Source: Macrostomum lignano (taxonomy: Eukaryota). From it: a DNA stretch of 64,000 bases. The position numbers and the translations under genes were made by a program. The notes below the pieces were generated by a model. That model made no database searches. It was not told the DNA's origin and worked only from the letters and a program-made list of their open reading frames with translations. The DNA lies in contig NIVC01001444.1 of NCBI GenBank assembly GCA_002269645.1, positions 62,001 through 126,000 on the forward strand. The letters are read 5' to 3'. This document shows, piece by piece, positions 29,642-53,100 of the stretch (position 1 is the stretch's first letter; each line of letters begins with the position of its first letter).

Positions 29642-30019
<378 letters not shown>

Positions 30020-31147: not shown

Positions 31148-32047
31148 TTGAATGATTCCTTTAAGGACTGCTGTAACGCCAGTTTTTTTACTAATTATTG
31201 TGTCGAAAAATTTCTAAATAGTTTTTTGCGGAAAGTACTATTTTGTGTATCGCCGGCTATTTATTGCAGCAAAATATTAATTTACGCGCCTTGTCAGCGG
31301 GAACTGGCCGTGGCCGCGCTCCCCTTTGACCCGGGCAAGCGGACTGTCTGCGACTGAGCCAATGGGGGCGGGGGGCAGAGAGGGGCACTTTGATTAGCGT
31401 CCCCCGACTCGAATCTGTTTTGGCAGACCACTCTGCCCACCCCGCCCCCTGGAGACGGGAGCATCGCTTTCAAGGGGGGAGAGAGAGAGAGAGAGAGAGG
31501 AGTCTGAAAGTGGACTCCACCGCTGAAGGAGGCGGGCCTACTGAAGCGTGCGCAAGGCCACCAAGGCTGTGGCTCAAACCCATTAATGACGATGAGGGAC
31601 TCTACATAGCTTAGATATTGGTCTCTTATCCAACTAAAAATCCACATAGCGAGTCTCTGTCTCAACTGGAATTCTGAGACCCCGGGGTCTTCCAAATCCT
31701 CTTCGACCTGAGAGACTTAGCCGTCGGAAATACTTTTTTCTTACTTTCTTGTTAGGCCGTCACTTTGGCCTGCTTTCCTCTGTGCGGTTTCTCTTGCCAA
31801 TAACTGTTATCTATGAATCAATAATTAGGGTATTAAGCTGATGTTGGACTCCAGCATCTACCAATCGGAATCTGGGCATCTGTCAGCTCAAGCACGCCAT
31901 GCTGAACCGCAACTACTGGTTACTTTATAATGTCACGATGACAATGAATCATAAATAAGTTCCTCTGCATCATTGCGCAGACTCAGTTGTGCTTGAACTA
32001 ACACTATATTTACTTTACTTACTGTTACTTATTTTTACTAATTCCAG

Positions 32048-32186
32048 GTACTCCTACCAGTTCGGATGGATGAACAACAAGAAGTTTATCAAGCAGTTGC
32101 AGAAGGACAATATCGACTTGGCCATCCTACAGAGCGAAATCGGGGCTGTCAGCACCAAGCGGCGAAAGAAATCGTTAGTGAAATAA
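32048..32186 (+). CDS. Candidate shared exon of unidentified small protein (YSYQFGWMNNKKFIKQLQKDNIDLAILQSEIGAVSTKRRKKSLVK*)
   Basis: Strong acceptor ttatttttactaattccag with ctaat branch-like motif; phase 2; very high GC3 over the first 38 codons. Confidence 0.6.
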
Positions 32187-32204: not shown

Positions 32205-32850
32205 GTGTAGGTTTGTGTCAGACATCTATGAATCAGTGTAGATTTGTGTCAGACAGCTATGCATCAGTGCAGGTTTGTGTCAGACATCTATGCATCATTG
32301 TAGATTTGTGTCAGACATCTATGCATCAGTGTAGATTTGTGTCAGACATCTATGCATCAGTGTAGATTTGTGTCAGACATCTATGCATCATTGTAGATTT
32401 GTGTCAGACATCTATGCATAGGTGTAGATTTGTGTCAGACATCTATGCATCAGTGTAGATTTGTGTCAGACATCTATGCATCATTGTAGATTTGTGTCAG
32501 ACATCTATGCATAGGTGTAGATTTGTGTCAGACATCTATGCATCAGTGTAGATTTGTGTCAGACATCTATGCATCATTGTAGATTTGTGTCAGACATCTA
32601 TGCATAGGTGTAGATTTGTGTCAGACATCTATGCATCAGTGTAGATTTGTGTCAGACAGCTATGCATAGGTGTAGGTTTGTGTCAGACATCTATGGATCA
32701 GTGCAGATTTGTGTCAGACAGCTATGCATAGGTGTAGGTTTGTGTCAGACATCTATGAATCAGTGCAGATTTGTGTCAGACAGCTATGCATAGGTGTAGG
32801 TTTGTGTCAGACATCTATGGATCAGTGCAGATTTGTGTCAGACATCTGCC
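32205..32850. repeat. Minisatellite, 31-bp unit (gtagatttgtgtcagacatctatgcatcagt), about 20 copies
   Basis: gtcagac at 32341 and 32372. Confidence 0.95.
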
Positions 32851-33162
32851 GTGTAGATTTATGTCGGTCACTTTTCTGACCACAGCATGGCTTTGCAGGA
32901 CGACTAAAAGATGAATTTGCATAGCTATCAATGTCGGAGAAACTTTTGTGGAGAAGTCAAAAGTTGGATTTTCAGGCGCTTTGCGTTGCGTAACAGCTTC
33001 AGCGCTAATGCGTTTGAATGGCTGGGAAAAGGGATTAAGCAGGACTGCCAGTGGGGCAGATAACCGCCTGTCGCTGTGTCTGCGTAATTTCCATGCAAAT
33101 TTTATTTTAGTAAATTCGGGTTGTGCCAGACACGATATCGATTTGCGGATTGTTACATTGGC

Positions 33163-34090
33163 CCTTCCAGATCCTCTGTTGCTGGGCCATCACCAGCCTC
33201 CCAGATTCTCAGTTGCTGGGCAGCCACCCTCCCAGATCCTCGGTTGCTGGGCCATCACCAGCCTCCCAGATCCTCGGTTGCTGGGCCATCACCAGCCTCC
33301 CAGATCATCGGTTGCTGGGCCATCGCCATACCAGATCCTTTAGCTTTAGTTTGGCTACTCCCAGATTCTCAGTTGCTGGGCAGCCACCCTCCCAGATTCT
33401 CAGTTGCTGGGCAGCCACCCTCCCAGATTCTCAGTTGCTGGGCAGCCACCCTCCCAGATTCTCAGTTGCTGGGCAGCCACCCTCCCAGATTCTCAGTTGT
33501 TGGGCAGCCACCCTCCCAGATTCTCAGTTGCTGGGCAGCCACCCTCCCAGATTCTCAGTTGCTGGGCAGCCACCCTCCCAGATCCTCAGTTGCTGGGCAG
33601 CCACCCTCCCAGATTCTCAGTTGCTGGGCAGCCACCCTCCCAGATCCTCGGTTGCTGGGCCATCACCAGCCTCCCAGATCCTCGGTTGCTGGGCCATCGC
33701 CATACCAGATCCTTTAGCTTTAGTTTGGCTACTCCCAGATTCTCAGTTGCTGGGCAGCCACCCTCCCAGATTCTCAGTTGCTGGGCAGCCACCCTCCCAG
33801 ATTCTCAGTTGCTGGGCAGCCACCCTCCCAGATTCTCAGTTGCTTGGCAGCCACCCTCCCAGATCCTCGGTTGCTGGACCATCACCAGCCTCCCAGATCC
33901 TCGGTTGCTGGACCATCACCAGCCTCCCAGATCCTCGGTTGCTGGACCATCACCAGCCTCCCAGATCCTCGGTTGCTGGGCCATCACCAGCCTCCCAGAT
34001 CCTCGGTTGCTGGACCATCACCAGCCTCCCAGATCCTCGGTTGCTGGGCCATCGCCATACCAGATCCTTTAGCTTTAGTTTGGCTACTCC
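33163..34090. repeat. Compound minisatellite of 31- and 34-bp units with a longer spacer unit recurring three times
   Basis: cccagattctcagttgctgggcagccaccct and cccagatcctcggttgctgggccatcaccagcct units; spacer at 33324, 33698, 34053. Confidence 0.93.
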
Positions 34091-34882: not shown

Positions 34883-35134
34883 GTAAAGCCGAAGGAGGAA
34901 TTTCTTCTGGGTGCTTTCAGAGATAAGTTCTGCTTTTCTTGACGCCTCAGACTGGTGCACTGCATACATGTATTTTATGGCATTCTTCATGTCCTACAGG
35001 ATCTATAGAGTCGAAGGCAAGCCGAGAAACACTTTGGGGGCATTGAGCAACTTACTTAAAACGAATCAAAAAAAGCCTAGCTCTCTCAAGCAACTCCTGT
35101 CCGTCTCTTTTTTCAACTCTTTACCCCCTCCCCA

Positions 35135-35720
35135 AATCCATCGCAATGTACACACTCTCTGACCCTCCAAATCCATCGCAATGTACACACACTCTGACCC
35201 TCCAAATCCATCGCAATGTACACACACTCTGACCCTCCAAATCCATCGCAATGTACACATACTCTGATTCTCTAAATCCATCGCAATGTACACACACTCT
35301 GACCCTCTAAATCCATCGCAATGTACACACACTCTGACCCTCTAAATCCATCGCAATGTACACACACTCTGACCCTCCAAATCCATCGCACACACTCTGA
35401 CCCTCTAAATCCATCGCAATGTACACACACTCTGACCCTCTAAATCCATCGCAATGTACACACACTGTGACCCTCTAAATCCATCGCAATGTACACACAC
35501 TCTGACCCTCCAAATCCATCGCAATGTACACACACTCTGACCCTCTAAATCCATCGCAATGTACACACACTCTGACCCTCCAAATCCATCGCAATGTACA
35601 CACACTCTGACCCTCTAAATCCATCGCAATGTACACACACTCTGACCCTCCAAATCCATCGCAATGTACACACTCTGACCCTCCAAATACATTTCAATGT
35701 ACGCACTCTCTGACCCTCTA
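35135..35720. repeat. Minisatellite, about 36-bp unit (ctctgaccctctaaatccatcgcaatgtacacaca), about 16 copies
   Basis: Direct periodicity. Confidence 0.95.
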
Positions 35721-36027
35721 AAATATCCCCAATTCATTTCAATGTAAGCACACAATATTCTTCAAAACAATCTGAGCCCATCACAACGGACAGGCTCACG
35801 AACTCTTCTCCTCAAAACTCTAGCAGGGAAATTTCCATTAATATTGATATTTCATTGTCATCATGTCCGCATTTTGCTGCCACTCTCCCTGCTTCTCTCC
35901 GCCGAGAGCTCCCATTCGCTGTCGAATCATAAATAAGCATAACTTGGGATAACCCTGCGGCAGGTCGGGCATATAGAATAAGAAGGTTTTAACTCTATCA
36001 GTAGCATTTGCCCCGAGCATTGAGGTG

Positions 36028-36298
36028 ATGTCGGAGCCCAGCTCTCAGCTCAGCCTGTTGCCAGGCAGCTGGCGTCATCAGCGAGACTCGCCTCCCATTG
36101 ATGAGGAGGAAATTTACCAGAGAAGTCGCGGCCCCAGCTCTAAGAATCCGCATTCCGCTCGGGCCCGTTACAGGTGGCGCGAACGGCTGCTGCACGTGAT
36201 CCGGTCCAATGTTGCGCAGATCATCCTGTGCGCTCTGGTGCTCATCGATGCGGTCATTGTCATAGCTGAGATCATCCTGGAGATCAAGGCCATCACCA
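36028..36298 (+). CDS. HVCN1: Voltage-gated proton channel (Hv-like), coding exon 1: N-terminus and S1
   Basis: WRERLLHVIRSNVAQIILCALVLIDAVIVIAEIILE matches Hv S0-S1 with the Asp equivalent to human D112; donor ACC A|gtgagt (phase 1). The exon may start at acceptor 36002, so the start codon is uncertain. Confidence 0.9.
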
Positions 36299-36364: not shown

Positions 36365-37355
36365 CGATAGATGAAGGAAGAGAGTGGGTTGCTAATCTAG
36401 CCTACATCATGATTGATGAAGGAATAGAATGGATTGCTAATCTAGCCTACATCATGATTGATGAAGGAATAGAATGGATTGCTAATCTAGCCTACATCAT
36501 GATTGATGAAGGAATGGAATGGATTGCTAATCTAGCCTACATCATGATTGATGAAGGAATAGAATGGATTGCTAATCTAGCCTACATCATGATTGATGAA
36601 GGAATAGAATGGATTGCTAATCTAGCCTACATCATGATTGATGAAGGAATAGAATGGATTGCTAATCTAGCCTGCATCATGATTGATGAAGGAATAGAAT
36701 GGATTGCTAATCTAGCCTACATCATGATTGATGAAGGAATAGAATGGATTGCTAATCTAGCCTACATCATGATTGATGAAGGAATAGAATGGGTTGCTAA
36801 TCTAGCCTACATCATGATTGATGAAGGAATAGAATGGATTGCTAATCTAACCAGCATCATGATTGATGAAGGAATAAATGGATTGCTAATCTAGCCTTCA
36901 TCATGGATGCAGGAATAGAGTGGGTTGCTAATCTAGCCAACATCATGATTAATGAAGGAATAGAATGAATTGCTAATCTAGCCAACATCATGATTAATGA
37001 AGGAATAGAATGAATTGCTAATCTAGCCAACATCATGATTGATGAAGGAATAGAATGAATTGCTAATCTAGCCAGCATTATGATTAATGAAGGAATAGAA
37101 TGAATTGCTAATCTAGCCAACATCATGATTGATGAAGGAATGGAATGGATTGCTAATCTAGCCTACATCATGATTGATGAAGGAATGGAATGGATTGCTA
37201 ATCTAGCCTGCATCATGATTGATGAAGGAATGGAATGGATTGCTAATCTAGCCTGTATCATGATTGGTGAAGGAATGGAATGGATTGCTAATCTATCCAA
37301 CATCATGAATGAAGGAATGAATTGCTTATCTAGCCAATCACGGATGAAAGAATAG
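36365..37355. repeat. Intronic minisatellite, 45-bp unit (gatgaaggaatagaatggattgctaatctagcctacatcatgatt), about 21 copies
   Basis: ggaat at 36421 and 36466; 15-aa pseudo-ORF periodicity. Confidence 0.96.
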
Positions 37356-38337
37356 AATGAATTGCTGTTTCATACCAGTAAAGAAGAATCAGAGCCATAA
37401 TTCCATACATTCGAAGTCAGCAGCCATTAGGAAGTGTTTCTTGACAACCTGACTGGTAAATGCCGCCCATCCTGGCAACACAACTCATAACTGCCTTTCC
37501 TTGCTTTCTTACTCGCCAAAGAGTGGATCAGCCCTTCACTGTCACTGAGTGCATGTCGCCAGGTCATTCATTACGGCCAGAAGTGCACCCGCTGAATCCC
37601 CTGGAATCACAGCACTCCCGGAGTCGTCCATCATCTGCGAATTGTCGCTTTGTATTTTTGCACCCTAAGATTCTTCAAGTTGGCCTCGCACAATGCGACA
37701 GAGCCACAGTTTCCACTTTCGCTATAAAATAATATATGCATCCTATAGTTATGATTGACAGTTCGAGTTTGGGCAGAAAATCTAAAAAACCGCACCATAC
37801 TTGGGATAGAGTTCGGTTCGAATGGGGTATTGCACACTTCTATGAAATCAAATATAAAGGTAATTATTGTCTTAGATTTGTTATAGCTGGATAAATAATA
37901 AAGGCAGGCAGTGAAGGGAAATGGAAAAGTGAACGGAGAATTATTGATGGAATGAATTGACCTTTTAATGGACTGGCACACAAGGAGTTCAGAATCTATG
38001 CTCATATTGGGAAGCATTGGTGCAGACAATTAGTTGTCTAGCAGAAGCAAAGTTGCGACAAAAGAGGCCAATAGTTGCTAGCAGTCCGGGAAAGGTGAGT
38101 AGTCAGACTGCAAAGAAACAAAACAAAAAGCTCAGAAGGCTTTTGTGGCGTGAGTACGCTCGTACTCAAAACAAAAGCACTTGGTTGGTCCTATTGGATT
38201 GTCTGCTTTTAGAAGGCTTTTGCCACCTGAATGGATTAGTGATGTGTCAGTCCAAATGGTTCAACCATGGACGACTTTATTCAAGCAGCTGGACTGGAGT
38301 CTACTCGTAATCTAGGATTCCACATGGTTAAAAAAAA

Positions 38338-38712
38338 CTCAGATCCCGAATCCCAACTCAGATCCTGAATCCCAACTCAGATCCCGAATCCCAACTCAGA
38401 TCCCGAATCCCAACTCAGATCCCGAATCCTAATTCAGATCCTGAATCCCAACTCAGATCCCGAATCCCAACTCAGATCCCGAATCCCAACTCAGATCCCG
38501 AATCCCAACTCAGATCCCGAAACCCAACTCAGATCCCGAAACCCAACTCAGATCCTGAATCCCAACTCAGATCCCGAATCCCAACCCAGATCCCGAATCC
38601 GAATTCAGATACCAAATCCCAGCTCCGATGCGGAATCCCAACTCAGATCCCGAATCCCAACTGAGATTCCAATACAAACACAAAATTCTATATCCGATCC
38701 CAGATCCCAACT
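38338..38712. repeat. Intronic minisatellite, 19-bp unit (ccaactcagatcccgaatc), about 18 copies
   Basis: Direct periodicity, decaying toward the acceptor. Confidence 0.93.
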
Positions 38713-38749: not shown

Positions 38750-39339
38750 GCGAGAAGGTGGCCCTGGAAGGCGCCTTCGTCAAGACCGCCAGCTTCGTGA
38801 ACGAGACCTTCGCAAACTGCCTGTCGGAGCGCGGCCTGCTGCTGCCCGAGTTCACCCAGCGCCTGCTCTCGTCGCCGCAGTTTGCAGAGCGCCTGGCCTC
38901 CAGCATGCTGAGCATCCTGCTGGCCCTCGGCGGCCACAACTCCAGCTCGGTGTGCAACGTCACAGGGGTCGCCACGGCGGTGGCTTCGGCGGGCTCCGCG
39001 GCTGCGTCCTCCTCGCCGGCGGCGGCGGCAGCGGCTGCTCGTTCGTCAACAGCTGGACGACCGGCGTCGGCAACTGCCGCTGGACTCCGGTTGAGACGGG
39101 CGGCAAGCGGGGGCGGCAGCAGCGGAGGCGGCAGCGGCGGAGGCGGCAGCAGTGGAGGCGGCGGCGGCGGAGTTAGAATATTCAGCAGCTACCAGCAGGA
39201 TTACAGCCACGCGAAGCTGCTGCACGACGTGTCCTCGGTGCTGCACTACGTCAGCATCGGCATTCTGGGCCTGTTCGTGCTGGAAGTGGCGCTGAAAGTT
39301 GCCTGCTTGGGACGGAACTTCGTGAGGGAAAAATTTGAG
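38750..39339 (+). CDS. HVCN1: Hv-like channel exon 2: long S1-S2 loop, S2 and start of S3
   Basis: gacag acceptor (phase 1, A+GC=Ser); VLHYVSIGILGLFVLEVALKV matches Hv S2 (H140, F150, E153, K157 equivalents); KFE|gtaaag donor, phase 0. Confidence 0.9.
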
Positions 39340-39394
39340 GTAAAGTTTTACTTGTCTGTTAGAATTTTAGCTCACTAGAGAGGACTGGGGAATA

Positions 39395-39967
39395 GCAGGG
39401 GGAGCAGACAGGGAAACAGCGCGGAGACAGGGTGTGGGGAGAAGAACAGACAGGGAAACAGCACGGAGACAGGATGTGGGGAGGGGAACAGACAGGGAAA
39501 CAGCACAGAGACAGGGTGTGGGGAGAAGAACAGACAGAGAAACAGCACGGAGACAGGATGTGGGGAGGGGAACAGACAGGGAAACAGCGCGGAGACAGGA
39601 TGTGGGGAGAAGAACAGACAGGGAAACAGCACGGAGACAGGATGTGGGGAGGGGAACAGACAGGGAAACAGCACGGAGACAGGGTGTGGGGAGAAGAACA
39701 GACAGAGAAACAGCACGGAGACAGGATGTGGGGAGGGGAACAGACAAGGAAACAGCGCGGAGACAGGATGTGGGGAGAAGAACAGACAGGGAAACAGCAC
39801 GGAGACAGGATGTGGGGAGGGGAACAGACAGGGAAACAGCACGGAGACAGGATGTGGGGAGGGGAACAGACAGGGAAACAGCACGGAGACAGGATGTGGG
39901 AAGGGGAACAGACAAGGAAACAGCGCGGAGACAGGATGTGGGGAGGGGAACAGACAGGGAAACAGCA
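39395..39967. repeat. Intronic G-rich minisatellite, 42-bp unit (ggagacaggatgtggggaggggaacagacagggaaacagcac), about 13 copies
   Basis: 14-aa pseudo-ORF periodicity in several frames. Confidence 0.96.
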
Positions 39968-40469
39968 TTTAATTTGGCCAAATTAAGCTGCCCGATGAAA
40001 GGTATGCGGAAAATCAAAAAAACATTCAGTGAAAAAAGACTAGCTAGGACTAAAAGTCTTTTATGACTGACTGTATGGAAACAAGGTTCAAGGTGGCTAG
40101 GGGGGGGGAGTGTTTTGGCAGGAAGTGCGTGCAGGCGCAAACAGGGGGGCTGTCGGTCATGGAAGACGAGCAGGGAAATTCCATTCTGCCCAGTCTGGTC
40201 CGGGAAGGGGAGGGGTACAGAGGTAAGAATGCCGAAAGTAAAAGTAATGATAATAGGGCCTTGGACACGGACCTGTGCCGTGCGTGTGCCAAGAAGTGGC
40301 CTTGAGAGATAGAAAGCACTCGGAATTCTACAGGGGTGATGTGGACCCCGGGGCTAGTGAAACAGGATATTCATACTTGCGGAGCCAAGTTGGGGTGGCG
40401 GCATGTTCCAGCGAATATTTCTGCTGGGACCACCCACCCCGCGATGCTGAGGTACTAATTACTGACTGA

Positions 40470-41110
40470 TTGTGTGATTGTGGCTGCGGGACTCAGCACT
40501 AATTGTGTGTGATTGTGGCTGCGGGACTCAGCACTGAGTGTGTGATTGTGGCTGCGGGACTCAGCACTGAGTGTGTGATTGTGGCTGCGGGACTCAGCAC
40601 TGAGTGAGTGAGATTGTGGCTGCGGGACTCAGCACTGATTTTGTGTGATTGTGGCTGCGGGACTCAGCACTGAGTGTGTGATTGTGGCTGCGGGACTCAG
40701 CACTGAGTGAGTGAGATTGTGGCTGCGGGACTCAGCACTGATTGTGTGATTGTGGCTGCGGGACTTAGCACTGAGTGTGTGATTGTGGCTGCGGGACTCA
40801 GCACTGATTGTGTGTGATTGTGGCTGCGGGACTCAGCACTGAGTGTGTGATTGTGGCTGCGGGACTCAGCACTGAGTGAGTGAGATTGTGGCTGCGGGAC
40901 TCAGCACTGAGTGTGTGATTGTGGCTGCGGGACTCAGCACTGAGTGAGTGAGATTGTGGCTGCGGGACTCAGCACTGAGTGTGTGATTGTGGCTGCGGGA
41001 CTCAGCACTGATTGTGTGTGATTGTGGCTGCGGGACTCAGCACTGTGTGTTAGATTGTGGCTGCGGGACTCAGCACTGTGTGTTAGATTGTGGCTGCGGG
41101 ACTCAGCACT
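40470..41110. repeat. Intronic minisatellite, 31-36-bp unit (gtgtgattgtggctgcgggactcagcactga), about 19 copies
   Basis: Constant gattgtggctgcgggactcagcactg core. Confidence 0.95.
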
Positions 41111-41175
41111 GTGTGTGACTGAGAGACAGACTGCAAAAGAGATTTACGACCCAATGTGACTGTACACCCGCGCAG

Positions 41176-41299
41176 ATCGTGGACGCCACAGTGATCCTGA
41201 TCTCATTCGTGGCAGACATCGTGTTCGTGAAGCTGGAATCCACAGAGGTGTCTGTCATGGTTCTGTTCCTGCTGTGGCGCATTGTTCGCGTCATCAATG
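41176..41299 (+). CDS. HVCN1: Hv-like channel exon 3: S3 and S4 (IVDATVILISFVADIVFVKLESTEVSVMVLFLLWRIVRVING)
   Basis: cgcag acceptor, phase 0; D174 and D185 equivalents; WRxxRxxNG S4 motif; AAT G|gtgagt donor, phase 1. Confidence 0.92.
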
Positions 41300-42119: not shown

Positions 42120-42829
42120 CAGGGGCGTCGCCACCGGGGGGACATTCCCCCCCCCCAGTAAAAGCTATGGGGGGGACATGCCAATGCTTTGTCCCCCCCC
42201 ACCCCACCTTGTTGACCCGTTATGGAAATCAATAATTTTGCTTCAGGGCGACAAAACATAGCGCCTGCGGCACCAAAATGAGTGCCTGTGGCACCAAAAT
42301 GAGTGCCTGTGGCACCAAAATGAGTGCCTGTGGCACCAAAATGAGCGCCTGCGGCACCAAAATGAGTGCCTGTGGCGCTTAAATGAGTCTCTGCGGTGTA
42401 AGCTAAGTGCCTGCGGCGCCAAAACGAGTACCTGCGGCGCTAAAATGAGTGCCTGCGGCGCTAAAATGAGTGCCTGCGGCGCCAAAACGAGTACCTGCGG
42501 CGCTAAAATGAGTGCCTGCGGCGCCAAAATGAGTACCTGCGGCGCTAAAATGAGTGCCAGCGACGCCAAAATGAGTGCCTGTGGCGCCAAAATGAGTACC
42601 TGGGGCGCCAAAACGAGTACCTGCGGCGCTAAAATGAGTGCCTGCGGCGCCAAAATGAGTACCTGCGGCGCTAAAATGAGTGCCAGCGACGCCAAAATGA
42701 GTGCCTGTGGCGCCAAAATGACCGATTCGGAAATAAGTACATGTACAATAGGAATTTTGTCATGTAAATGTACATGTAGAAGTCTGGGCTTTGTCCCCCC
42801 CCACCATAAAATCCATGGCGACGTCCCTG
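42120..42829. mobile_element. Putative non-autonomous TIR element enclosing a 21-bp minisatellite
   Basis: CAGGGGCGTCGCCA at 42120 and TGGCGACGTCCCTG ending 42829 (13/14 inverted match); gggggaca/tgtccccc subterminal motifs; no TSD seen. Confidence 0.55.
42258..42722. repeat. Intronic minisatellite, 21-bp unit (ggcgccaaaatgagtgcctgc), about 21 copies
   Basis: 7-aa pseudo-ORF periodicity. Confidence 0.95.
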
Positions 42830-42935: not shown

Positions 42936-43051
42936 GCCTGATGATGCACGAGAAGCAGAGGGACGAATTTCGAATTCAACTGCAGAAGCGAGCCCGGCGA
43001 ATGTCCGAGATGAAGTGCGACACCCTGGAGACAGAGCGCGACCTTCAAGAG
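42936..43051 (+). CDS. HVCN1: Hv-like channel exon 4: C-terminal coiled coil (GLMMHEKQRDEFRIQLQKRARRMSEMKCDTLETERDLQE)
   Basis: cctgacag acceptor (phase 1, G+GC=Gly); continues the S4 helix into a charged heptad-like segment; GAG|gtttgt donor, phase 0. Confidence 0.85.
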
Positions 43052-43558: not shown

Positions 43559-43637
43559 AAGCAGATCCTGTTCCTGGAGGAGCTCTGCCGCGAGCTCGGC
43601 GGAAGCGAAGATCAAATCGGCAACTGCAAGCCGCGGT
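43559..43637 (+). CDS. HVCN1: Hv-like channel exon 5 (KQILFLEELCRELGGSEDQIGNCKPR)
   Basis: cctaac branch-like motif and ccgcag acceptor, phase 0; resembles the Hv coiled-coil end (human EQEIERLNKLLRQHG); T|gtgagt donor; no stop reached. Confidence 0.8.
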
Positions 43638-44138
43638 GTGAGTTGCTCTGACTGCTAAATTGCTCCAATTAATCTCTTAGACAGTCGGCTCTCACCAATT
43701 GCTAAATTAACAAAAGCATTACGACCAACGCGTTGGTTAAAAGCTTGGAAGCAGACTTGTTGCCTACTAGATTTCTTGTGCTTTTTTGTGAGCAAGCAAT
43801 GCAGATGGAGCAGTTATAGAGGAAAAGAGATCGAAGCTGCTTATTAGCCAATTCCCAAATGAAAGCGTAGAGGCGGCTGGCTTTTTCATCATTGCCGAAA
43901 AAAGGGGCTAAAAACAGGTTCTTGATGCAACTGATGCAGCAGCCCACTCAGGGCTGGAAACTGCGCGGAGGAAGGCGCATTACTAGCAAATGCTGGCTGC
44001 ATCTTTTTGTCTAAGCACAGCTTTTTTATGCAGGTATTATTACCTGATATCAAATTTGTCGGAGTGAGAACGTAAGGGAACCAATCAGGGATGGGTTTAG
44101 AAATGAAATTGTTACAAGATTGCACTATTCCTTTGGCT

Positions 44139-47100
44139 CTCTGACACCCAACGATCACACACATCACTCAGCTGTCCATGCAGCTCCGATGCCTCTGACA
44201 CCCACCGATCACACACATCACTCAGCTGTCCATGCAACTCCGATGCCTCTGACACCCACCGATCACACACATCACTCAGCTGTGACCTGTCCATGCAACT
44301 CCGATGCCTCTGACACCCACCGATCACACACATCACTCAGCTGTCCATGCAGCTCCGATGCCTCTGACACCCACCGATCACACACATCACTCAGCTGTGA
44401 CCTGTCCATGCAACTCCGATGCCTCTGACACCCACCGATCACACACATCACTCAGCTGTGACCTGTCCATGCAACTCCGATGCCTCTGACACCCACCGAT
44501 CACACACATCACTCAGCTGTCCATGCAGCTCCGATGCCTCTGACACCCACCGATCACACACATCACTCAGCTGTGACCTGTCCATGCAACTCCGATGCCT
44601 CTGACACCCACCGATCACACACATCACTCAGCTGTCCATGCAGCTCCGATGCCTCTGACACCCACCGATCACACACATCACTCAGCTGTCCATGCAGCTC
44701 CGATGCCTCTGACACCCACCGATCACACACATCACTCAGCTGTGACCTGTCCATGCAACTCCGATGCCTCTGACACCCACCGATCACACACATCACTCAG
44801 CTGTCCATGCAGCTCCGATGCCTCTGACACCCACCGATCACACACATCACTCAGCTGTGACCTGTCCATGCAACTCCGATGCCTCTGACACCCACCGATC
44901 ACACACATCACTCAGCTGTCCATGCAGCTCCGATGCCTCTGACACCCACCGATCACACACATCACTCAGCTGTCCATGCAGCTCCGATGCCTCTGACACC
45001 CACCGATCACACACATCACTCAGCTGTGACCTGTCCATGCAACTCCGATGCCTCTGACACCCACCGATCACACACATCACTCAGCTGTCCATGCAGCTCC
45101 GATGCCTCTGACACCCACCGATCACACACATCACTCAGCTGTCCATGCAGCTCCGATGCCTCTGACACCCACCGATCACACACATCACTCAGCTGTGACC
45201 TGTCCATGCAACTCCGATGCCTCTGACACCCACCGATCACACACATCACTCAGCTGTCCATGCAGCTCCGATGCCTCTGACACCCACCGATCACACACAT
45301 CACTCAGCTGTGACCTGTCCATGCAACTCCGATGCCTCTGACACCCACCGATCACACACATCACTCAGCTGTCCATGCAGCTCCGATGCCTCTGACACCC
45401 ACCGATCACACACATCACTCAGCTGTCCATGCAGCTCCGATGCCTCTGACACCCACCGATCACACACATCACTCAGCTGTGACCTGTCCATGCAACTCCG
45501 ATGCCTCTGACACCCACCGATCACACACATCACTCAGCTGTGACCTGTCCATGCAACTCCGATGCCTCTGACACCCACCGATCACACACATCACTCAGCT
45601 GTGACCTGTCCATGCAACTCCGATGCCTCTGACACCCACCGATCACACACATCACTCAGCTGTGACCTGTCCATGCAACTCCGATGCCTCTGACACCCAC
45701 CGATCACACACATCACTCAGCTGTCCATGCATGCTCCGATGCCTCTGACACCCACCGATCACACACATCACTCAGCTGTCCATGCAGCTCCGATGCCTCT
45801 GACACCCACCGATCACACACATCACTCAGCTGTGACCTGTCCATGCAACTCCGATGCCTCTGACACCCACCGATCACACACATCACTCAGCTGTCCATGC
45901 AGCTCCGATGCCTCTGACACCCACCGATCACACACATCACTCAGCTGTGACCTGTCCATGCAACTCCGATGCCTCTGACACCCACCGATCACACACATCA
46001 CTCAGCTGTGACCTGTCCATGCAACTCCGATGCCTCTGACACCCACCGATCACACACATCACTCAGCTGTGACCTGTCCATGCAACTCCGATGCCTCTGA
46101 CACCCACCGATCACACACATCACTCAGCTGTCCATGCAGCTCCGATGCCTCTGACACCCACCGATCACACACATCACTCAGCTGTGACCTGTCCATGCAA
46201 CTCCGATGCCTCTGACACCCACCGATCACACACATCACTCAGCTGTCCATGCACTCCGATGCCTCTGACACCCACCGATCACACACATCACTCAGCTGTC
46301 CATGCAGCTCCGATGCCTCTGACACCCACCGATCACACACATCACTCAGCTGTCCATGCAGCTCCGATGCCTCTGACACCCACCGATCACACACATCACT
46401 CAGCTGTCCATGCAGCTCCGATGCCTCTGACACCCACCGATCACACACATCACTCAGCTGTGACCTGTCCATGCAACTCCGATGCCTCTGACACCCACCG
46501 ATCACACACATCACTCAGCTGTCCATGCAGCTCCGATGCCTCTGACACCCACCGATCACACACATCACTCAGCTGTCCATGCAGCTCCGATGCCTCTGAC
46601 ACCCACCGATCACACACATCACTCAGCTGTGACCTGTCCATGCAACTCCGATGCCTCTGACACCCACCGATCACACACATCACTCAGCTGTCCATGCAGC
46701 TCCGATGCCTCTGACACCCACCGATCACACACATCACTCAGCTGTGACCTGTCCATGCAACTCCGATGCCTCTGACACCCACCGATCACACACATCACTC
46801 AGCTGTGACCTGTCCATGCAACTCCGATGCCTCTGACACCCACCGATCACACACATCACTCAGCTGTCCATGCAGCTCCGATGCCTCTGACACCCACCGA
46901 TCACACACATCACTCAGCTGTGACCTGTCCATGCAACTCCGATGCCTCTGACACCCACCGATCACACACATCACTCAGCTGTCCATGCACTCCGATGCCT
47001 CTGACACCCACCGATCACACACATCACTCAGCTGTGACCTGTCCATGCAACTCCGATGCCTCTGACACCCACCGATCACACACATCAGCTGTGACCTGTC

Positions 47101-50100
47101 CATGCAACTCCGATGCCTCTGACACCCACCGATCACACACATCACTCAGCTGTGACCTGTCCATGCAACTCCGATGCCTCTGACACCCACCGATCACACA
47201 CATCACTCAGCTGTCCATGCAGCTCCGATGCCTCTGACACCCACCGATCACACACATCACTCAGCTGTGACCTGTCCATGCAACTCCGATGCCTCTGACA
47301 CCCACCGATCACACACATCACTCAGCTGTCCATGCAGCTCCGATGCCTCTGACACCCACCGATCACACACATCACTCAGCTGTCCATGCAGCTCCGATGC
47401 CTCTGACACCCACCGATCACACACATCACTCAGCTGTCCATGCAGCTCCGATGCCTCTGACACCCACCGATCACACACATCACTCAGCTGTCCATGCAGC
47501 TCCGATGCCTCTGACACCCACCGATCACACACATCACTCAGCTGTGACCTGTCCATGCAACTCCGATGCCTCTGACACCCACCGATCACACACATCACTC
47601 AGCTGTCCATGCAGCTCCGATGCCTCTGACACCCACCGATCACACACATCACTCAGCTGTCCATGCAGCTCCGATGCCTCTGACACCCACCGATCACACA
47701 CATCACTCAGCTGTGACCTGTCCATGCAACTCCGATGCCTCTGACACCCACCGATCACACACATCACTCAGCTGTCCATGCAGCTCCGATGCCTCTGACA
47801 CCCACCGATCACACACATCACTCAGCTGTGACCTGTCCATGCAACTCCGATGCCTCTGACACCCACCGATCACACACATCACTCAGCTGTCCATGCAGCT
47901 CCGATGCCTCTGACACCCACCGATCACACACATCACTCAGCTGTCCATGCAACTCCGATGCCTCTGACACCCACCGATCACACACATCACTCAGCTGTGA
48001 CCTGTCCATGCAACTCCGATGCCTCTGACACCCACCGATCACACACATCACTCAGCTGTGACCTGTCCATGCAACTCCGATGCCTCTGACACCCACCGAT
48101 CACACACATCACTCAGCTGTGACCTGTCCATGCAACTCCGATGCCTCTGACACCCACCGATCACACACATCACTCAGCTGTGACCTGTCCATGCAACTCC
48201 GATGCCTCTGACACCCACCGATCACACACATCACTCAGCTGTCCATGCAACTCCGATGCCTCTGACACCCACCGATCACACACATCACTCAGCTGTGACC
48301 TGTCCATGCAACTCCGATGCCTCTGACACCCACCGATCACACACATCACTCAGCTGTCCATGCAACTCCGATGCCTCTGACACCCACCGATCACACACAT
48401 CACTCAGCTGTGACCTGTCCATGCAACTCCGATGCCTCTGACACCCACCGATCACACACATCACTCAGCTGTGACCTGTCCATGCAACTCCGATGCCTCT
48501 GACACCCACCGATCACACACATCACTCAGCTGTGACCTGTCCATGCAACTCCGATGCCTCTGACACCCACCGATCACACACATCACTCAGCTGTGACCTG
48601 TCCATGCAACTCCGATGCCTCTGACACCCACCGATCACACACATCACTCAGCTGTCCATGCATGCAACTCCGATGCCTCTGACACCCACCGATCACACAC
48701 ATCACTCAGCTGTGACCTGTCCATGCAACTCCGATGCCTCTGACACCCACCGATCACACACATCACTCAGCTGTGACCTGTCCATGCAACTCCGATGCCT
48801 CTGACACCCACCGATCACACACATCACTCAGCTGTCCATGCAACTCCGATGCCTCTGACACCCACCGATCACACACATCACTCAGCTGTGACCTGTCCAT
48901 GCAACTCCGATGCCTCTGACACCCACCGATCACACACATCACTCAGCTGTCCATGCAGCTCCGATGCCTCTGACACCCACCGATCACACACATCACTCAG
49001 CTGTGACCTGTCCATGCAACTCCGATGCCTCTGACACCCACCGATCACACACATCACTCAGCTGTGACCTGTCCATGCAACTCCGATGCCTCTGACACCC
49101 ACCGATCACACACATCACTCAGCTGTCCATGCAGCTCCGATGCCTCTGACACCCACCGATCACACACATCACTCAGCTGTGACCTGTCCATGCAACTCCG
49201 ATGCCTCTGACACCCACCGATCACACACATCACTCAGCTGTCCATGCAACTCCGATGCCTCTGACACCCACCGATCACACACATCACTCAGCTGTCCATG
49301 CAGCTCCGATGCCTCTGACACCCACCGATCACACACATCACTCAGCTGTGACCTGTCCATGCAACTCCGATGCCTCTGACACCCACCGATCACACACATC
49401 ACTCAGCTGTCCATGCAGCTCCGATGCCTCTGACACCCACCGATCACACACATCACTCAGCTGTCCATGCAACTCCGATGCCTCTGACACCCACCGATCA
49501 CACACATCACTCAGCTGTCCATGCAGCTCCGATGCCTCTGACACCCACCGATCACACACATCACTCAGCTGTGACCTGTCCATGCAACTCCGATGCCTCT
49601 GACACCCACCGATCACACACATCACTCAGCTGTCCATGCAACTCCGATGCCTCTGACACCCACCGATCACACACATCACTCAGCTGTGACCTGTCCATGC
49701 AACTCCGATGCCTCTGACACCCACCGATCACACACATCACTCAGCTGTGACCTGTCCATGCAACTCCGATGCCTCTGACACCCACCGATCACACACATCA
49801 CTCAGCTGTCCATGCAGCTCCGATGCCTCTGACACCCACCGATCACACACATCACTCAGCTGTGACCTGTCCATGCAACTCCGATGCCTCTGACACCCAC
49901 CGATCACACACATCACTCAGCTGTCCATGCAGCTCCGATGCCTCTGACACCCACCGATCACACACATCACTCAGCTGTCCATGCAACTCCGATGCCTCTG
50001 ACACCCACCGATCACACACATCACTCAGCTGTGACCTGTCCATGCAACTCCGATGCCTCTGACACCCACCGATCACACACATCACTCAGCTGTCCTGTCC

Positions 50101-53100
50101 ATGCAACTCCGATGCCTCTGACACCCACCGATCACACACATCACTCAGCTGTCCATGCAACTCCGATGCCTCTGACACCCACCGATCACACACATCACTC
50201 AGCTGTCCATGCAACTCCGATGCCTCTGACACCCACCGATCACACACATCACTCAGCTGTGACCTGTCCATGCAACTCCGATGCCTCTGACACCCACCGA
50301 TCACACACATCACTCAGCTGTCCATGCAGCTCCGATGCCTCTGACACCCACCGATCACACACATCACTCAGCTGTCCATGCAACTCCGATGCCTCTGACA
50401 CCCACCGATCACACACATCACTCAGCTGTCCATGCAACTCCGATGCCTCTGACACCCACCGATCACACACATCACTCAGCTGTCCATGCAACTCCGATGC
50501 CTCTGACACCCACCGATCACACACATCACTCAGCTGTCCATGCAACTCCGATGCCTCTGACACCCACCGATCACACACATCACTCAGCTGTCCATGCAAC
50601 TCCGATGCCTCTGACACCCACCGATCACACACATCACTCAGCTGTGACCTGTCCATGCAACTCCGATGCCTCTGACACCCACCGATCACACACATCACTC
50701 AGCTGTCCATGCAACTCCGATGCCTCTGACACCCACCGATCACACACATCACTCAGCTGTCCATGCAACTCCGATGCCTCTGACACCCACCGATCACACA
50801 CATCACTCAGCTGTCCATGCAACTCCGATGCCTCTGACACCCACCGATCACACACATCACTCAGCTGTCCATGCAGCTCCGATGCCTCTGACACCCACCG
50901 ATCACACACATCACTCAGCTGTCCATGCAACTCCGATGCCTCTGACACCCACCGATCACACACATCACTCAGCTGTCCATGCAACTCCGATGCCTCTGAC
51001 ACCCACCGATCACACACATCACTCAGCTGTCCATGCAACTCCGATGCCTCTGACACCCACCGATCACACACATCACTCAGCTGTCCTGTCCATGCAACTC
51101 CGATGCCTCTGACACCCACCGATCACACACATCACTCAGCTGTCCATGCAACTCCGATGCCTCTGACACCCACCGATCACACACATCACTCAGCTGTCCA
51201 TGCAACTCCGATGCCTCTGACACCCACCGATCACACACATCACTCAGCTGTCCATGCATGCTCCGATGCCTCTGACACCCACCGATCACACACATCACTC
51301 AGCTGTGACCATGCATGCTCCGATGCCTCTGACACCCACCGATCACACACATCACTCAGCTGTCCATGCATGCAACTCCGATGCCTCTGACACCCACCGA
51401 TCACACACATCACTCAGCTGTCCTGTCCATGCAACTCCGATGCCTCTGACACCCACCGATCACACACATCACTCAGCTGTGACCTGTCCATGCAACTCCG
51501 ATGCCTCTGACACCCACCGATCACACACATCACTCAGCTGTGACCTGTCCATGCAACTCCGATGCCTCTGACACCCACCGATCACACACATCACTCAGCT
51601 GTCCATGCAGCTCCGATGCCTCTGACACCCACCGATCACACACATCACTCAGCTGTGACCTGTCCATGCAACTCCGATGCCTCTGACACCCACCGATCAC
51701 ACACATCACTCAGCTGTGACCTGTCCATGCAACTCCGATGCCTCTGACACCCACCGATCACACACATCACTCAGCTGTCCATGCAACTCCGATGCCTCTG
51801 ACACCCACCGATCACACACATCACTCAGCTGTCCTGTCATGCAACTCCGATGCCTCTGACACCCACCGATCACACACATCACTCAGCTGTCCATGCAACT
51901 CCGATGCCTCTGACACCCACCGATCACACACATCACTCAGCTGTGACCTGTCCATGCAACTCCGATGCCTCTGACACCCACCGATCACACACATCACTCA
52001 GCTGTCCATGCAGCTCCGATGCCTCTGACACCCACCGATCACACACATCACTCAGCTGTCCATGCAGCTCCGATGCCTCTGACACCCACCGATCACACAC
52101 ATCACTCAGCTGTCCTGTCCATGCAACTCCGATGCCTCTGACACCCACCGATCACACACATCACTCAGCTGTCCATGCATGCTCCGATGCCTCTGACACC
52201 CACCGATCACACACATCACTCAGCTGTCCATGCAACTCCGATGCCTCTGACACCCACCGATCACACACATCACTCAGCTGTCCATGCAACTCCGATGCCT
52301 CTGACACCCACCGATCACACACATCACTCAGCTGTCCATGCATGCTCCGATGCCTCTGACACCCACCGATCACACACATCACTCAGCTGTCCATGCAGCT
52401 CCGATGCCTCTGACACCCACCGATCACACACATCACTCAGCTGTCCATGCAACTCCGATGCCTCTGACACCCACCGATCACACACATCACTCAGCTGTGA
52501 CCTGTCCATGCAACTCCGATGCCTCTGACACCCACCGATCACACACATCACTCAGCTGTGACCTGTCATGCAACTCCGATGCCTCTGACACCCACCGATC
52601 ACACACATCACTCAGCTGTCCATGCAGCTCCGATGCCTCTGACACCCACCGATCACACACATCACTCAGCTGTCCATGCAACTCCGATGCCTCTGACACC
52701 CACCGATCACACACATCACTCAGCTGTGACCTGCATGCTCCGATGCCTCTGACACCCACCGATCACACACATCACTCAGCTGTCCATGCAGCTCCGATGC
52801 CTCTGACACCCACCGATCACACACATCACTCAGCTGTCCATGCAACTCCGATGCCTCTGACACCCACCGATCACACACATCACTCAGCTGTGACCTGTCC
52901 ATGCAACTCCGATGCCTCTGACACCCACCGATCACACACATCACTCAGCTGTCCATGCATGCTCCGATGCCTCTGACACCCACCGATCACACACATCACT
53001 CAGCTGTCCATGCAGCTCCGATGCCTCTGACACCCACCGATCACACACATCACTCAGCTGTCCATGCAGCTCCGATGCCTCTGACACCCACCGATCACAC

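What the first reader, a model, noticed from the sequence alone, without database searches (positions are those of the whole stretch)
41176..41299. Proton channel lacking the first S4 gating arginine (LLWRIVRVING)
The canonical Hv signature is RxWRxxR; here codon CTG puts Leu at R1, leaving two arginines. The S1 Asp, F150, E153, K157, D174, D185 and N214 equivalents are all retained. As I recall, the molluscan Hv3 type (LPWRxxR) also lacks R1 and leaks protons at rest, and R1 substitutions in human Hv1 open a resting-state pathway. This may be a non-molluscan member of that class without the proline, predicted to show reduced gating charge or leak. The retained S1 Asp argues against TMEM266.
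Basis: partly seen in the sequence, partly recalled or inferred. Interest (0 to 1): 0.72.

Follow-up and report, generated by a model that had tools for sequence, protein, structure and literature searches.

The report
Two-arginine proton channel gene of flatworms

Summary
Window 41176-41299 (+) is an exact exon (AG acceptor, GTGAGT donor) encoding S3-S4 of an Hv-family voltage sensor. Its S4 reads L-L-W-R-I-V-R-V-I-N, so Leu (CTG, 41269-41271) sits where human Hv1 has R205. The equivalents of D112, F150, E153, K157, D174, D185 and N214 are all present on this and two upstream exons.

The DNA is Macrostomum lignano or a very close relative. Leu at R1 is not an error, because all 25 flatworm homologues carry it.

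The protein belongs to a spiralian family without R1 and without the Hv3 proline. Its members have a long S1-S2 loop, an N-terminal KDNID motif, FRIxLQKRARR after S4, and cysteines at +49 and +62. I found it in flatworms, an annelid, a nemertean, a bryozoan and a brachiopod.

In a neighbour-joining tree this family is sister to the LPWR (Hv3) clade (bootstrap 0.89) and far from TMEM266. Unlike Hv3, it keeps the hydrophobic-gasket residues.

A 2023 review already notes proline-less "unconventional" Hv channels in annelids, bryozoans and nemerteans. This gene is therefore a new (flatworm) member of a known but functionally untested kind. Reduced gating charge is a reasonable prediction; leak is not.

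The parts
32048..32173 (+). Coding exon for the cytoplasmic N-terminus: (R)YSYQFGWMNNKKFIKQLQKDNIDLAILQSEIGAVSTKRRKK. It corresponds to exon 2 of the Spirometra gene. The ATG-bearing first exon was not located.
   Evidence: tblastn with Spirometra P0003 residues 26-69 gives E = 2e-6. Acceptor is ttccag|G and donor is GTTAGT. The same exon and phase are seen in Spirometra locus L001. The KDNID-type motif is present in 18 of 23 members of the family.
36174..36298 (+). Exon encoding S1: (S)WRERLLHVIRSNVAQIILCALVLIDAVIVIAEIILEIKAIT. The selectivity-filter Asp (GAT, 36247-36249) is the hHv1 D112 equivalent. The E119 equivalent is at 36268-70.
   Evidence: The acceptor ttacag|G yields K-K-S-W-R, which matches trematode K[ST]WR. 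The ATG at 36028 that I first used is intronic.
38750..39339 (+). Exon encoding the roughly 166-residue extracellular S1-S2 loop and S2. The loop has three N-glycosylation sequons (NET, NSS, NVT) and a poly-Ala/Gly/Ser tract. The H140, F150, E153 and K157 equivalents are at 39244-46, 39274-76, 39283-85 and 39295-97.
   Evidence: The acceptor matches M. lignano model P0001 (...KAITS|EKVALEG) and cestode ...KAEKLSLE.
41176..41299 (+). The exon of the finding, encoding S3 and S4. The D174 equivalent is at 41182-84 and the D185 equivalent at 41215-17. The S4 signature L-L-W-R-I-V-R-V-I-N spans 41269-41298.
41269..41271 (+). CTG (Leu) at the position of the first gating arginine (hHv1 R205). R2 is at 41278-80 and R3 at 41287-89.
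   Evidence: Alignment to 5OQK. The column table shows Leu in 25 of 25 flatworm sequences.
42936..43051 (+). Exon encoding the post-S4 helix: (G)LMMHEKQRDEFRIQLQKRARRMSEMKCDTLETERDLQE. This is the start of the predicted coiled coil and carries the family motif FRIxLQKRARR.
   Evidence: AlphaFold2 predicts one continuous helix from S4 through this exon.
43559..43637 (+). Exon encoding KQILFLEELCRELGGSEDQIGNCKPR, with Cys at +49 and +62 after the N214 equivalent. A GTGAGT donor lies at 43638 in phase 1. If the donor is not used, read-through gives CELL and a stop at 43649-51. The expected last exon (NNAVKSMA motif) is not in the window.
   Evidence: Spirometra has a phase-1 donor at the same place after CRPN, followed by a last exon. 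The M. lignano paralogue P0159 continues CKPK-F-VCISKQQSNNAVKSM.

Best explanation
The exon is part of an apparently intact gene, at least eight exons long by comparison with Spirometra, of Macrostomum lignano or a very close relative. It encodes a pore-less four-helix voltage-sensor protein of the Hv (voltage-gated proton channel) family.

It belongs to a spiralian subfamily that I call 'class C'. Its members share these features:
- Leu at R1 and no proline before the S4 Trp.
- A long extracellular S1-S2 loop with N-glycosylation sequons.
- An N-terminal KDNID motif.
- An FRIxLQKRARR helix after S4.
- A Cys pair at +49 and +62 after the N214 equivalent.

Class C is the sister group of the LPWR clade that contains the characterised Aplysia Hv3.

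Inferred mechanism. Protons would pass through the voltage sensor itself. Selectivity would come from the S1 Asp paired with R2 or R3. Only two S4 arginines carry gating charge, so voltage dependence should be shallower, and probably shifted, relative to three-arginine Hv1. The S4-contiguous helix should dimerise the protein. The hydrophobic gasket (V109, F150, V177, V178 equivalents) is intact and R1 is replaced by a hydrophobic Leu. I therefore expect a closed state that still seals, rather than the strong resting leak of AcHv3.

Shown: gene structure, homology, residue pattern, family membership and conservation. Inferred: proton conduction (about 0.65), reduced gating charge (about 0.6 given conduction), absence of large leak (about 0.5).
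For: Identity. The best protein hits are M. lignano 'Voltage-gated hydrogen channel 1' entries at 96-100% identity. PDB hits are Hv1 at E = 3e-17. Pfam Ion_trans scores 26.3 bits over S2-S4 only. AlphaFold2 gives TM helices with pLDDT 84-93 and one continuous helix from S4 into the coiled-coil region.

Gene model. All junctions are GT-AG. Intron positions and phases match the Spirometra gene.

Family. In a profile search of 1.84 billion representatives, the top hits are all [LIV]-x-W-R-x-x-R proteins. They come from cestodes, trematodes, a monogenean, Lingula, Owenia, Bugula and Tubulanus.

Signature motifs are near-exclusive to the family.

Neighbour-joining bootstraps: flatworms 0.99, class C 0.86, class B 0.90, B+C 0.89 (0.82 without the R1 and x columns).

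Pore and gating residues. D112, D174, D185, R2, R3 and N214 are essentially invariant in class C. The gasket residues are kept in flatworms, whereas the Hv3 clade has N/A/S at position 109 and L/M at position 150.

Literature. AcHv3 conducts protons despite lacking R1 (PMC10911540). R205A lowers apparent gating valence from 0.90 to 0.57 (PMC10377628). Gasket mutations cause closed-state leak (PMC6754559).
Against: No functional or expression data exist for any class C protein. The first (ATG) exon and the expected last exon were not found in the window, and a satellite array of at least 20 kb starts about 500 bp after the last recognisable exon. This particular copy could therefore be truncated. 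The TM core alone does not resolve whether class C is closer to Hv3 or to canonical Hv1: core identity of the window protein is 37% to class A and 33% to class B; hhalign scores are C-A 205.6 and C-B 196.6; B+C bootstrap on the core alone is 0.36. The tree is neighbour-joining on hand-picked taxa without an outgroup. Foldseek against PDB gave no significant match (best E = 0.9). Parasitic flatworm members have lost E153, a monogenean has lost W207 and a leech has lost R2. Conduction is therefore not guaranteed across the family.
Confidence: 0.7

Rival explanations
1. It is simply the flatworm orthologue of canonical Hv1 that lost R1 independently. It would be unrelated to molluscan Hv3 and would behave like an ordinary Hv1 with a slightly altered G-V relation.
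For: UniProt names these proteins 'Voltage-gated hydrogen channel 1'. In the TM core the window protein is 37% identical to canonical Hv1s but 33% to the LPWR class. hhalign scores are C-A 205.6 and C-B 196.6. F150 and V109 are canonical. No canonical RLWR gene from a flatworm appeared among the hits examined.
Against: With the post-S4 helix included, the A+C grouping has bootstrap below 0.01 and B+C has 0.89. Classes B and C share Cys at +49 and +62 and a QLQK-ARR motif, whereas class A and TMEM266 have Cys at +35. B and C also share the loss of R1 and the long S1-S2 loop (median 134-139 residues against 13 in class A). Non-flatworm phyla that have a canonical Hv1 also have a class C gene, for example Lingula.
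Confidence: 0.12
2. It is a non-conducting voltage sensor in the manner of TMEM266/HVRP1. It would sense voltage and perhaps signal through its cytoplasmic tail, but carry no proton current.
For: NCBI labels isoforms of the Lingula class C gene 'transmembrane protein 266' (the review supplement lists it as 'C15orf27 homolog'). Relatives have long, probably disordered C-terminal tails. Several family members have lost residues thought important for Hv1 gating: E153, W207 or R2.
Against: Human TMEM266 has V111, M185 and D217 where Hv1 has D112, D185 and N214, and it keeps all three S4 arginines (PMC6392501). The window protein shows the opposite pattern at every one of these sites. Core identity to TMEM266 is 25%. 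The HMM score is 45.8 bits for TMEM266 against 113-118 bits for Hv classes. The TMEM266 clade has bootstrap 1.0 and C+T is below 0.01. AcHv3, from the sister clade, does conduct protons.
Confidence: 0.1
3. The Leu is an assembly or sequencing artefact, or this copy is a decaying pseudogene in a repeat-ridden polyploid genome.
For: The genome is packed with minisatellites. One M. lignano database model (P0001) shows compensated frameshifts in S4 and in the loop. The first and last exons were not found here, and a satellite of at least 20 kb abuts the 3' end.
Against: Leu at R1 occurs in 25 of 25 flatworm sequences from independent projects and in three other M. lignano models. All six recognisable exons are open, and their GT-AG junctions and phases are conserved with Spirometra. 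Every functionally critical residue is kept.
Confidence: 0.05

Closest known systems
Aplysia californica AcHv3 and the molluscan 'unconventional' Hv3 family (Chaves et al. 2023, PMC10911540); found here as P0096 (980 aa, L429-P430)
   Same: No arginine at R1 (Leu instead). W, R2, R3, N214, the S1 Asp, D174 and D185 are retained. Both have a very long S1-S2 loop and Cys residues at +49 and +62 in the post-S4 helix. It is the sister clade in the neighbour-joining tree (bootstrap 0.89).
   Different: The window protein has no proline before Trp. It keeps F150 and V109, whereas Hv3 has L/M and N/A/S at those positions. Its S3-S4 linker is 11 residues against 16. It has an N-terminal KDNID motif and the CKP motif. 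The C-terminus is short as far as the window shows. It lies outside the LPWR clade (class B bootstrap 0.90). Its function is unknown.
Proline-less 'unconventional' HV channels of Annelida, Bryozoa and Nemertea noted in the review 'Voltage-Gated Proton Channels in the Tree of Life' (PMC10377628, section 2.1.4 and Figure S1: Eisenia GIUK01058977, Dendrobeania GJXY01243660, Lingula XM_013530614)
   Same: Same family by every criterion tested: S4 motif, loop, FRIxLQKRARR, C(K/R)P at +62, and clade support 0.86.
   Different: The review does not place flatworms in this group. It describes only two other Schistosoma channels with long S3-S4 loops, and it states that R1 is naturally replaced only in HV3. 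Flatworm members have a shorter S3-S4 linker, and the parasitic ones have lost E153.
Canonical Hv1 / HVCN1 (human Q96D96; structures 5OQK and 3WKV)
   Same: Four-helix voltage sensor without a pore domain. D112, F150, E153, K157, D174, D185, W207, R208, R211, N214, H140 and the hydrophobic gasket are retained. S4 continues into a helix.
   Different: R205 is replaced by Leu. The S1-S2 loop is 166 residues against 12. The H193 equivalent is absent. Cys is at +49 and +62 instead of +35. There are extra N-terminal and post-S4 motifs.
TMEM266 / HVRP1 (C15orf27)
   Same: Hv-like voltage sensor with a coiled coil. An invertebrate relative of the window protein has been auto-named TMEM266.
   Different: TMEM266 has V, M and D at the D112, D185 and N214 positions and keeps R1. 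Core identity is 25%. It forms a separate clade with bootstrap 1.0.

Membership tests
Hv (voltage-gated proton channel) family, broad sense | Four transmembrane helices (S1-S4) forming a voltage sensor, with no S5-S6 pore domain | tested here: met
   The PDB sequence search hits Hv1 only in two stretches, S1 and S2-S4. Pfam Ion_trans matches profile positions 27-109 of 241. AlphaFold2 helices are consistent with S1-S4 plus one long C-terminal helix. No further exons with pore-like sequence were found.
Hv (voltage-gated proton channel) family, broad sense | Asp (or Glu) selectivity filter in S1 (hHv1 D112) | tested here: met
   GAT at 36247-36249. Asp in 18 of 19 flatworm and 8 of 8 other class C sequences.
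Hv (voltage-gated proton channel) family, broad sense | S4 signature RxWRxxR | tested here: not met
   S4 reads LLWRIVR. W, R2 and R3 are present and R1 is Leu. The same departure occurs in AcHv3, which still conducts protons.
Hv (voltage-gated proton channel) family, broad sense | Proton-selective, voltage- and delta-pH-dependent conductance | not testable with these tools
   Needs patch-clamp of the expressed protein.
Molluscan Hv3 (AcHv3 type) | xPWRxxR: no R1, and a proline directly before the S4 Trp | tested here: not met
   R1 is absent, which fits, but the residue before Trp is Leu, not Pro. All 63 members of the LPWR class have Pro.
Molluscan Hv3 (AcHv3 type) | [quoted passage not shown] | tested here: met
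   166 residues here. Class B median is 134 (range 95-582), and AcHv3 has 299.
Molluscan Hv3 (AcHv3 type) | Large intracellular C-terminal domain | tested here: inconclusive
   Only about 65-70 residues after the N214 equivalent are encoded in the window, but a conserved donor implies a missing last exon. Flatworm relatives have 68-561 residues.
Molluscan Hv3 (AcHv3 type) | Falls inside the Hv3 clade in a phylogeny | tested here: not met
   The LPWR clade excludes it (bootstrap 0.90). It falls in the sister clade (0.86), and the two together have 0.89.
Spiralian R1-less, proline-less Hv ('class C'; the review's unconventional HV without S4 proline) | Hydrophobic residue at R1, no proline, W-R-x-x-R-x-x-N kept | tested here: met
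Spiralian R1-less, proline-less Hv ('class C'; the review's unconventional HV without S4 proline) | Cytoplasmic signature motifs: N-terminal D[NDS]xD, post-S4 F[RK]IxLQKR, and C[KRH]P exactly 62 residues after the N214 equivalent | tested here: met
   All three are present in the window protein. Frequencies in class C are 18/23, 20 sequences and 23/28. In the LPWR class they are 0/44, 0 and 1/59. In canonical Hv1 they are 2/54, 0 and 0/23.
Spiralian R1-less, proline-less Hv ('class C'; the review's unconventional HV without S4 proline) | Clusters with named members from other phyla | tested here: met
   Class C bootstrap is 0.86 with Lingula, Bugula, Tubulanus and P0023 (unnamed, Logan assembly) included. 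The flatworm sub-clade has 0.99.
TMEM266 / HVRP1 | Non-acidic residues at the D112 and D185 positions (V111, M185), Asp at the N214 position, and three S4 arginines plus K213 | tested here: not met
   The window protein has D, D, N and only two arginines.
TMEM266 / HVRP1 | Groups with vertebrate TMEM266 sequences | tested here: not met
   TMEM266 clade has bootstrap 1.0 and C+T is below 0.01. Core identity is 25%. HMM score is 45.8 bits.

The most novel reading that the evidence does not exclude
Class C may be an ancient spiralian proton channel that gates with only two S4 arginines behind an intact hydrophobic gasket. It would be a natural experiment that separates loss of R1 from the proline and gasket changes of Hv3. 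Measuring it would show which change causes the AcHv3 leak. In flukes, tapeworms and schistosomes, which have also replaced E153, the channel could be a constitutively biased proton pathway with no close counterpart in the vertebrate host.
Probability: 0.3. Interest if true: 0.6.

Novelty: new member of a known kind. Interest (0 to 1): 0.4.

Why it matters
Only one natural Hv channel without R1 (AcHv3) has been characterised. Its leak cannot be assigned to a cause, because it also has the S4 proline and an altered hydrophobic gasket. The flatworm and spiralian family identified here lacks R1 but keeps the gasket and has no proline. Expressing it would test directly what R1 contributes to gating charge and to sealing of the closed state. 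M. lignano is a laboratory flatworm, so an in vivo role could in principle be examined there. The same family is present, with further changes at E153, in medically and veterinarily important flukes and tapeworms. It also suggests two annotation problems: 'Voltage-gated hydrogen channel 1' for these proteins and 'transmembrane protein 266' for the Lingula member both look imprecise.

Tried and rejected
1. My first gene model started at the ATG at 36028. I rejected it when a conserved upstream exon (32048-32173) and the acceptor at 36174 were found.
2. I first set the exon 4 end at 39342, one codon too long. I corrected it to 39339.
3. The search for the ATG-bearing first exon found no convincing candidate, whether I looked for acidic tails or for any short ATG ORF ending in AG/CG|GT.
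4. tblastn for the last exon (NNAVKSMA motif) found nothing in the window.
6. The profile word-index search with alignment A3 returned only 14 hits; the tool scored only the 8000 candidates sharing most words.
7. Neighbour-joining trees on 103-113 taxa gave the B+C split in the best tree, but with only 0.19-0.26 bootstrap. One search also had a numerical overflow and should be disregarded. TM-core-only analyses are unresolved.
8. Foldseek of the AlphaFold2 model against PDB gave no significant match (best E = 0.9), although nearly all listed matches are voltage-sensor domains.
9. Literature searches for functional work on flatworm Hv channels, or on proline-less Hv3-like channels, found none.

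Full report
**What is at the coordinates**

Window 41176-41299 (+) is preceded by an AG acceptor and followed by GTGAGT. It translates in one frame to IVDATVILISFVADIVFVKLESTEVSVMVLFLLWRIVRVIN(G).

It also finds an S1 exon near 36.2 kb and an S2 exon near 39.3 kb. phmmer of the assembled protein against PDB sequences gives human Hv1 (5OQK) at E = 3.1e-17 and the mouse Hv1 chimera (3WKV) at 6.2e-16. In the printed alignment, 'lfllwrivrving' lies over 'lllrlwrvarIing'.

The residue at the R205 (R1) position is therefore the first Leu of LLW (CTG, 41269-41271). W207, R208, R211 and N214 are present. All key codons were re-read individually:
- S1 Asp at 36247-49.
- F150, E153 and K157 equivalents at 39274-76, 39283-85 and 39295-97.
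- D174 and D185 equivalents at 41182-84 and 41215-17.

**Organism and gene model**

The closest database proteins are Macrostomum lignano 'Voltage-gated hydrogen channel 1' entries at 96-100% identity. M. lignano is a free-living flatworm of the Macrostomorpha.

My first model began at an ATG at 36028, and that was wrong. The N-terminus of the Spirometra homologue matches window 32046-32177 (E = 2e-6). Splicing 32173|36174 produces ...KKSWRERLL..., which matches the trematode K[ST]WR context.

The recognisable coding exons are 32048-32173, 36174-36298, 38750-39339, 41176-41299, 42936-43051 and 43559-43637. All are GT-AG. The Spirometra gene (locus L001) has eight coding exons, and its introns lie at the same positions and phases. 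It has a 25-residue first exon, and a phase-1 donor directly after C-R-P-N followed by a last exon.

In the window the matching GTGAGT donor sits after C-K-P-R. The M. lignano paralogue P0159 continues there with F-VCISKQQSNNAVKSM. Neither the first exon nor this last exon could be found in the window. A satellite array of at least 20 kb begins at 44139. The protein is therefore incomplete at both ends as seen here, but the whole channel core is present and open.

**Is the Leu real?**

Every one of 25 flatworm homologues has Leu at this column. They include four M. lignano models, cestodes, trematodes including schistosomes, and a monogenean. A sequencing error is therefore excluded for practical purposes.

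**Family assignment**

I searched a profile of the window protein plus three cestode homologues against 1.84 billion representative proteins. It gave 1004 hits at E < 1e-3. The best 150 fall into three S4 classes:
- Class A: canonical R-L-W-R-x-x-R, with a short S1-S2 loop (median 13 residues).
- Class B: L-P-W-R-x-x-R. It includes P0096, which is Aplysia LOC101855857 at 980 aa with L429-P430, i.e. AcHv3.
- Class C: [LIV]-x-W-R-x-x-R without proline. This class holds the window protein and all of its best hits.

Named class C members come from these taxa:
- Cestodes: Hymenolepis, Rodentolepis, Spirometra, Sparganum, Taenia, Mesocestoides, Anoplocephala.
- Trematodes: Clonorchis, Fasciola, Calicophoron, Schistosoma mekongi, Heterobilharzia.
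- A monogenean: Cichlidogyrus.
- Other phyla: the brachiopod Lingula, the annelid Owenia, the bryozoan Bugula and the nemertean Tubulanus.

Class C has its own signature:

| Motif | Class C | Class B | Class A |
|---|---|---|---|
| N-terminal D[NDS]xD | 18/23 | 0/44 | 2/54 |
| F[RK]IxLQKR after S4 | 20 sequences | 0 | 0 |
| C[KRH]P exactly 62 residues after the N214 equivalent | 23/28 | 1/59 | 0/23 |

**Relation to Hv3, Hv1 and TMEM266**

In the TM core alone the three Hv classes are about equidistant:
- hhalign scores are C-A 205.6, C-B 196.6 and B-A 212.9.
- The window protein is 37% identical to class A and 33% to class B.
- The core-only B+C bootstrap is 0.36.

The 58 residues after S4 align without gaps in all classes, and they are informative. 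Classes B and C share Cys at +49 and +62 and a QLQK-ARR motif. For example, the nemertean LPWR protein P0030 reads IRMQLQKHARRK...LCRKHGAEEREINAC. Class A and TMEM266 instead have Cys at +35, as in human C249.

I ran neighbour-joining with 500 bootstraps on 47 taxa and 161 columns:

| Grouping | Bootstrap |
|---|---|
| Flatworm class C | 0.99 |
| Class C | 0.86 |
| Class B | 0.90 |
| B+C | 0.89 (0.82 with the R1 and x columns removed) |
| TMEM266 | 1.0 |
| A+C | below 0.01 |
| C+T | below 0.01 |

TMEM266 is also excluded by residues. The human protein has V111, M185 and D217 and keeps three S4 arginines (PMC6392501). My recalled sequence matched all 14 residues cited there.

Class C is therefore best read as the sister family of the Hv3 clade. 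Loss of R1 and gain of the long loop most simply occurred once in their common ancestor. The caveats are that the method is neighbour-joining, the taxa were hand-picked from hits to a flatworm profile, and there is no outgroup.

**What is known already**

Chaves et al. showed that AcHv3 is proton selective, has about 60 mV per e-fold voltage dependence, and shows a conspicuous proton leak (PMC10911540).

The 2023 review (PMC10377628) says that 'unconventional' HV channels with large loops but without the S4 proline exist in Annelida, Bryozoa and Nemertea. Its supplement prints Eisenia, Dendrobeania and Lingula sequences that are class C by my criteria. For Platyhelminthes the review discusses only two other Schistosoma channels with long S3-S4 loops, and lists accession numbers that include a Macrostomum transcript. 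It also states that R1 is naturally replaced only in HV3.

I found no functional work on any class C or flatworm Hv protein. The window gene is thus a new, flatworm member of a kind that is known at sequence level and uncharacterised functionally.

**Likely mechanism**

The residues that make Hv1 a proton channel are essentially invariant in class C. These are the S1 Asp, R2, R3, N214, D174, D185 and W207.

AlphaFold2 with a 26-sequence class C alignment gives mean pLDDT 72, with 84-93 in the TM helices. It predicts one continuous helix from S4 through the post-S4 exons, as in dimeric Hv1. It also predicts a disordered low-complexity stretch in the loop (partial-model residues 145-224, pLDDT below 50). 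The first half of the loop is predicted helical. The loop carries three N-glycosylation sequons, which fits an extracellular position.

With two rather than three S4 arginines, I expect less gating charge. In human Hv1, R205A lowers the apparent valence from 0.90 to 0.57.

I do not think leak follows. The hydrophobic gasket of human Hv1 consists of V109, F150, V177 and V178. Weakening it produces closed-state proton leak (PMC6754559). In flatworm class C these positions are V, F, V/I and I. The Hv3 clade instead has N/A/S at 109 and L/M at 150. R1-to-Ala mutants of Hv1 were reported not to leak. The window protein should therefore separate the effect of losing R1 from the other Hv3 peculiarities. 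All of this is inference, and nothing about function was tested here.

**Variation inside the family**

Macrostomum keeps E153. Parasitic flatworms have C, Q, T or Y at that position. The monogenean has lost W207, and the leech Helobdella has Gln at R2. Cestodes carry two class C paralogues, for example Sparganum P0004 and P0013 on one contig. M. lignano has at least two loci, about 72-82% identical in the core.

**Verdict**

It overstates two things, the singularity of the gene and the expectation of leak. Interest is moderate.

Noticed in passing
window 44139-64000: A satellite array of at least 20 kb fills the rest of the window. Its unit is about 54 bp with a 115-bp higher-order period, about 350 copies at 92% identity, and GC skew is about -0.5. 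It starts about 500 bp after the last recognisable exon of the channel gene, where the last intron would be expected.
   Followed up: partly
window 32205-32847, 33162-34049, 35132-35722, 36366-37312, 38336-38667, 39399-39967, 40465-41117, 42263-42721: Four of the five introns between the recognised exons of the channel gene carry one or more minisatellite arrays, with units of 19-45 bp and 13-28 copies. The rest of the window is similarly packed: 37 Tandem Repeats Finder rows score at least 300. Most long ORFs in the window are translations of these repeats.
   Followed up: partly
window 38990-39175 (within exon 38750-39339): The S1-S2 loop contains a GC-rich poly-Ala/Gly/Ser coding tract. It differs between M. 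lignano copies (GGGSGGGG here, GGGGGGGG in P0001) and is much shorter in the paralogue P0159. It looks like a rapidly evolving low-complexity insert inside an otherwise conserved loop.
   Followed up: partly
protein P0001 (UniProt A0A1I8F401, M. lignano) against window 41263-41299 and 38850-38900: This database model reads LLCAHCRVING in S4 and TSACSRRRKRLASS in the loop. Both look like compensated frameshifts relative to the window sequence. They are either indel errors of an older assembly or a decaying paralogue.
   Followed up: no
proteins P0003-P0020, P0021, P0126 (relatives, not in the window): Parasitic flatworm members of the family have replaced the highly conserved E153 with Q, C, T or Y. 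A monogenean (Cichlidogyrus) has Leu for W207, and the leech Helobdella has Gln for R2. Macrostomum keeps the ancestral residues.
   Followed up: partly
proteins P0017 (Schistosoma mekongi), P0018 (Heterobilharzia americana): Schistosomes carry a class C gene. It differs from the two long-S3-S4-loop Hv genes printed for Schistosoma in the 2023 review. Schistosomes may therefore have three Hv-family genes.
   Followed up: no
protein P0019 and cluster members (Lingula anatina LOC106155662): NCBI names some isoforms of this class C gene 'transmembrane protein 266'. By residues and by the tree it is not a TMEM266 orthologue. The TMEM266 homologues I retrieved whose source names an organism were all vertebrate.
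   Followed up: yes
protein P0030 (Lineus longissimus, Nemertea): A nemertean protein has the LPWR (proline) S4 motif. The review attributes this motif only to molluscs, brachiopods and phoronids. Conversely, the mollusc Dreissena has a proline-less VLWR member (P0110).
   Followed up: no
protein P0159 (UniProt A0A1I8GWV1, M. lignano paralogue): This 1103-residue model fuses the paralogous channel to what seems to be a downstream gene related to a B-box-type-domain protein (P0052 overlaps it). It is probably a gene-model fusion. It shows that the paralogous locus has a different 3' neighbourhood from the satellite seen here.
   Followed up: no
window 19033-19559 and 29646-30019: Long microsatellites, (CTCTC)n at about 105 copies and (ATCT)n at about 94 copies, lie upstream of the channel gene.
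   Followed up: no
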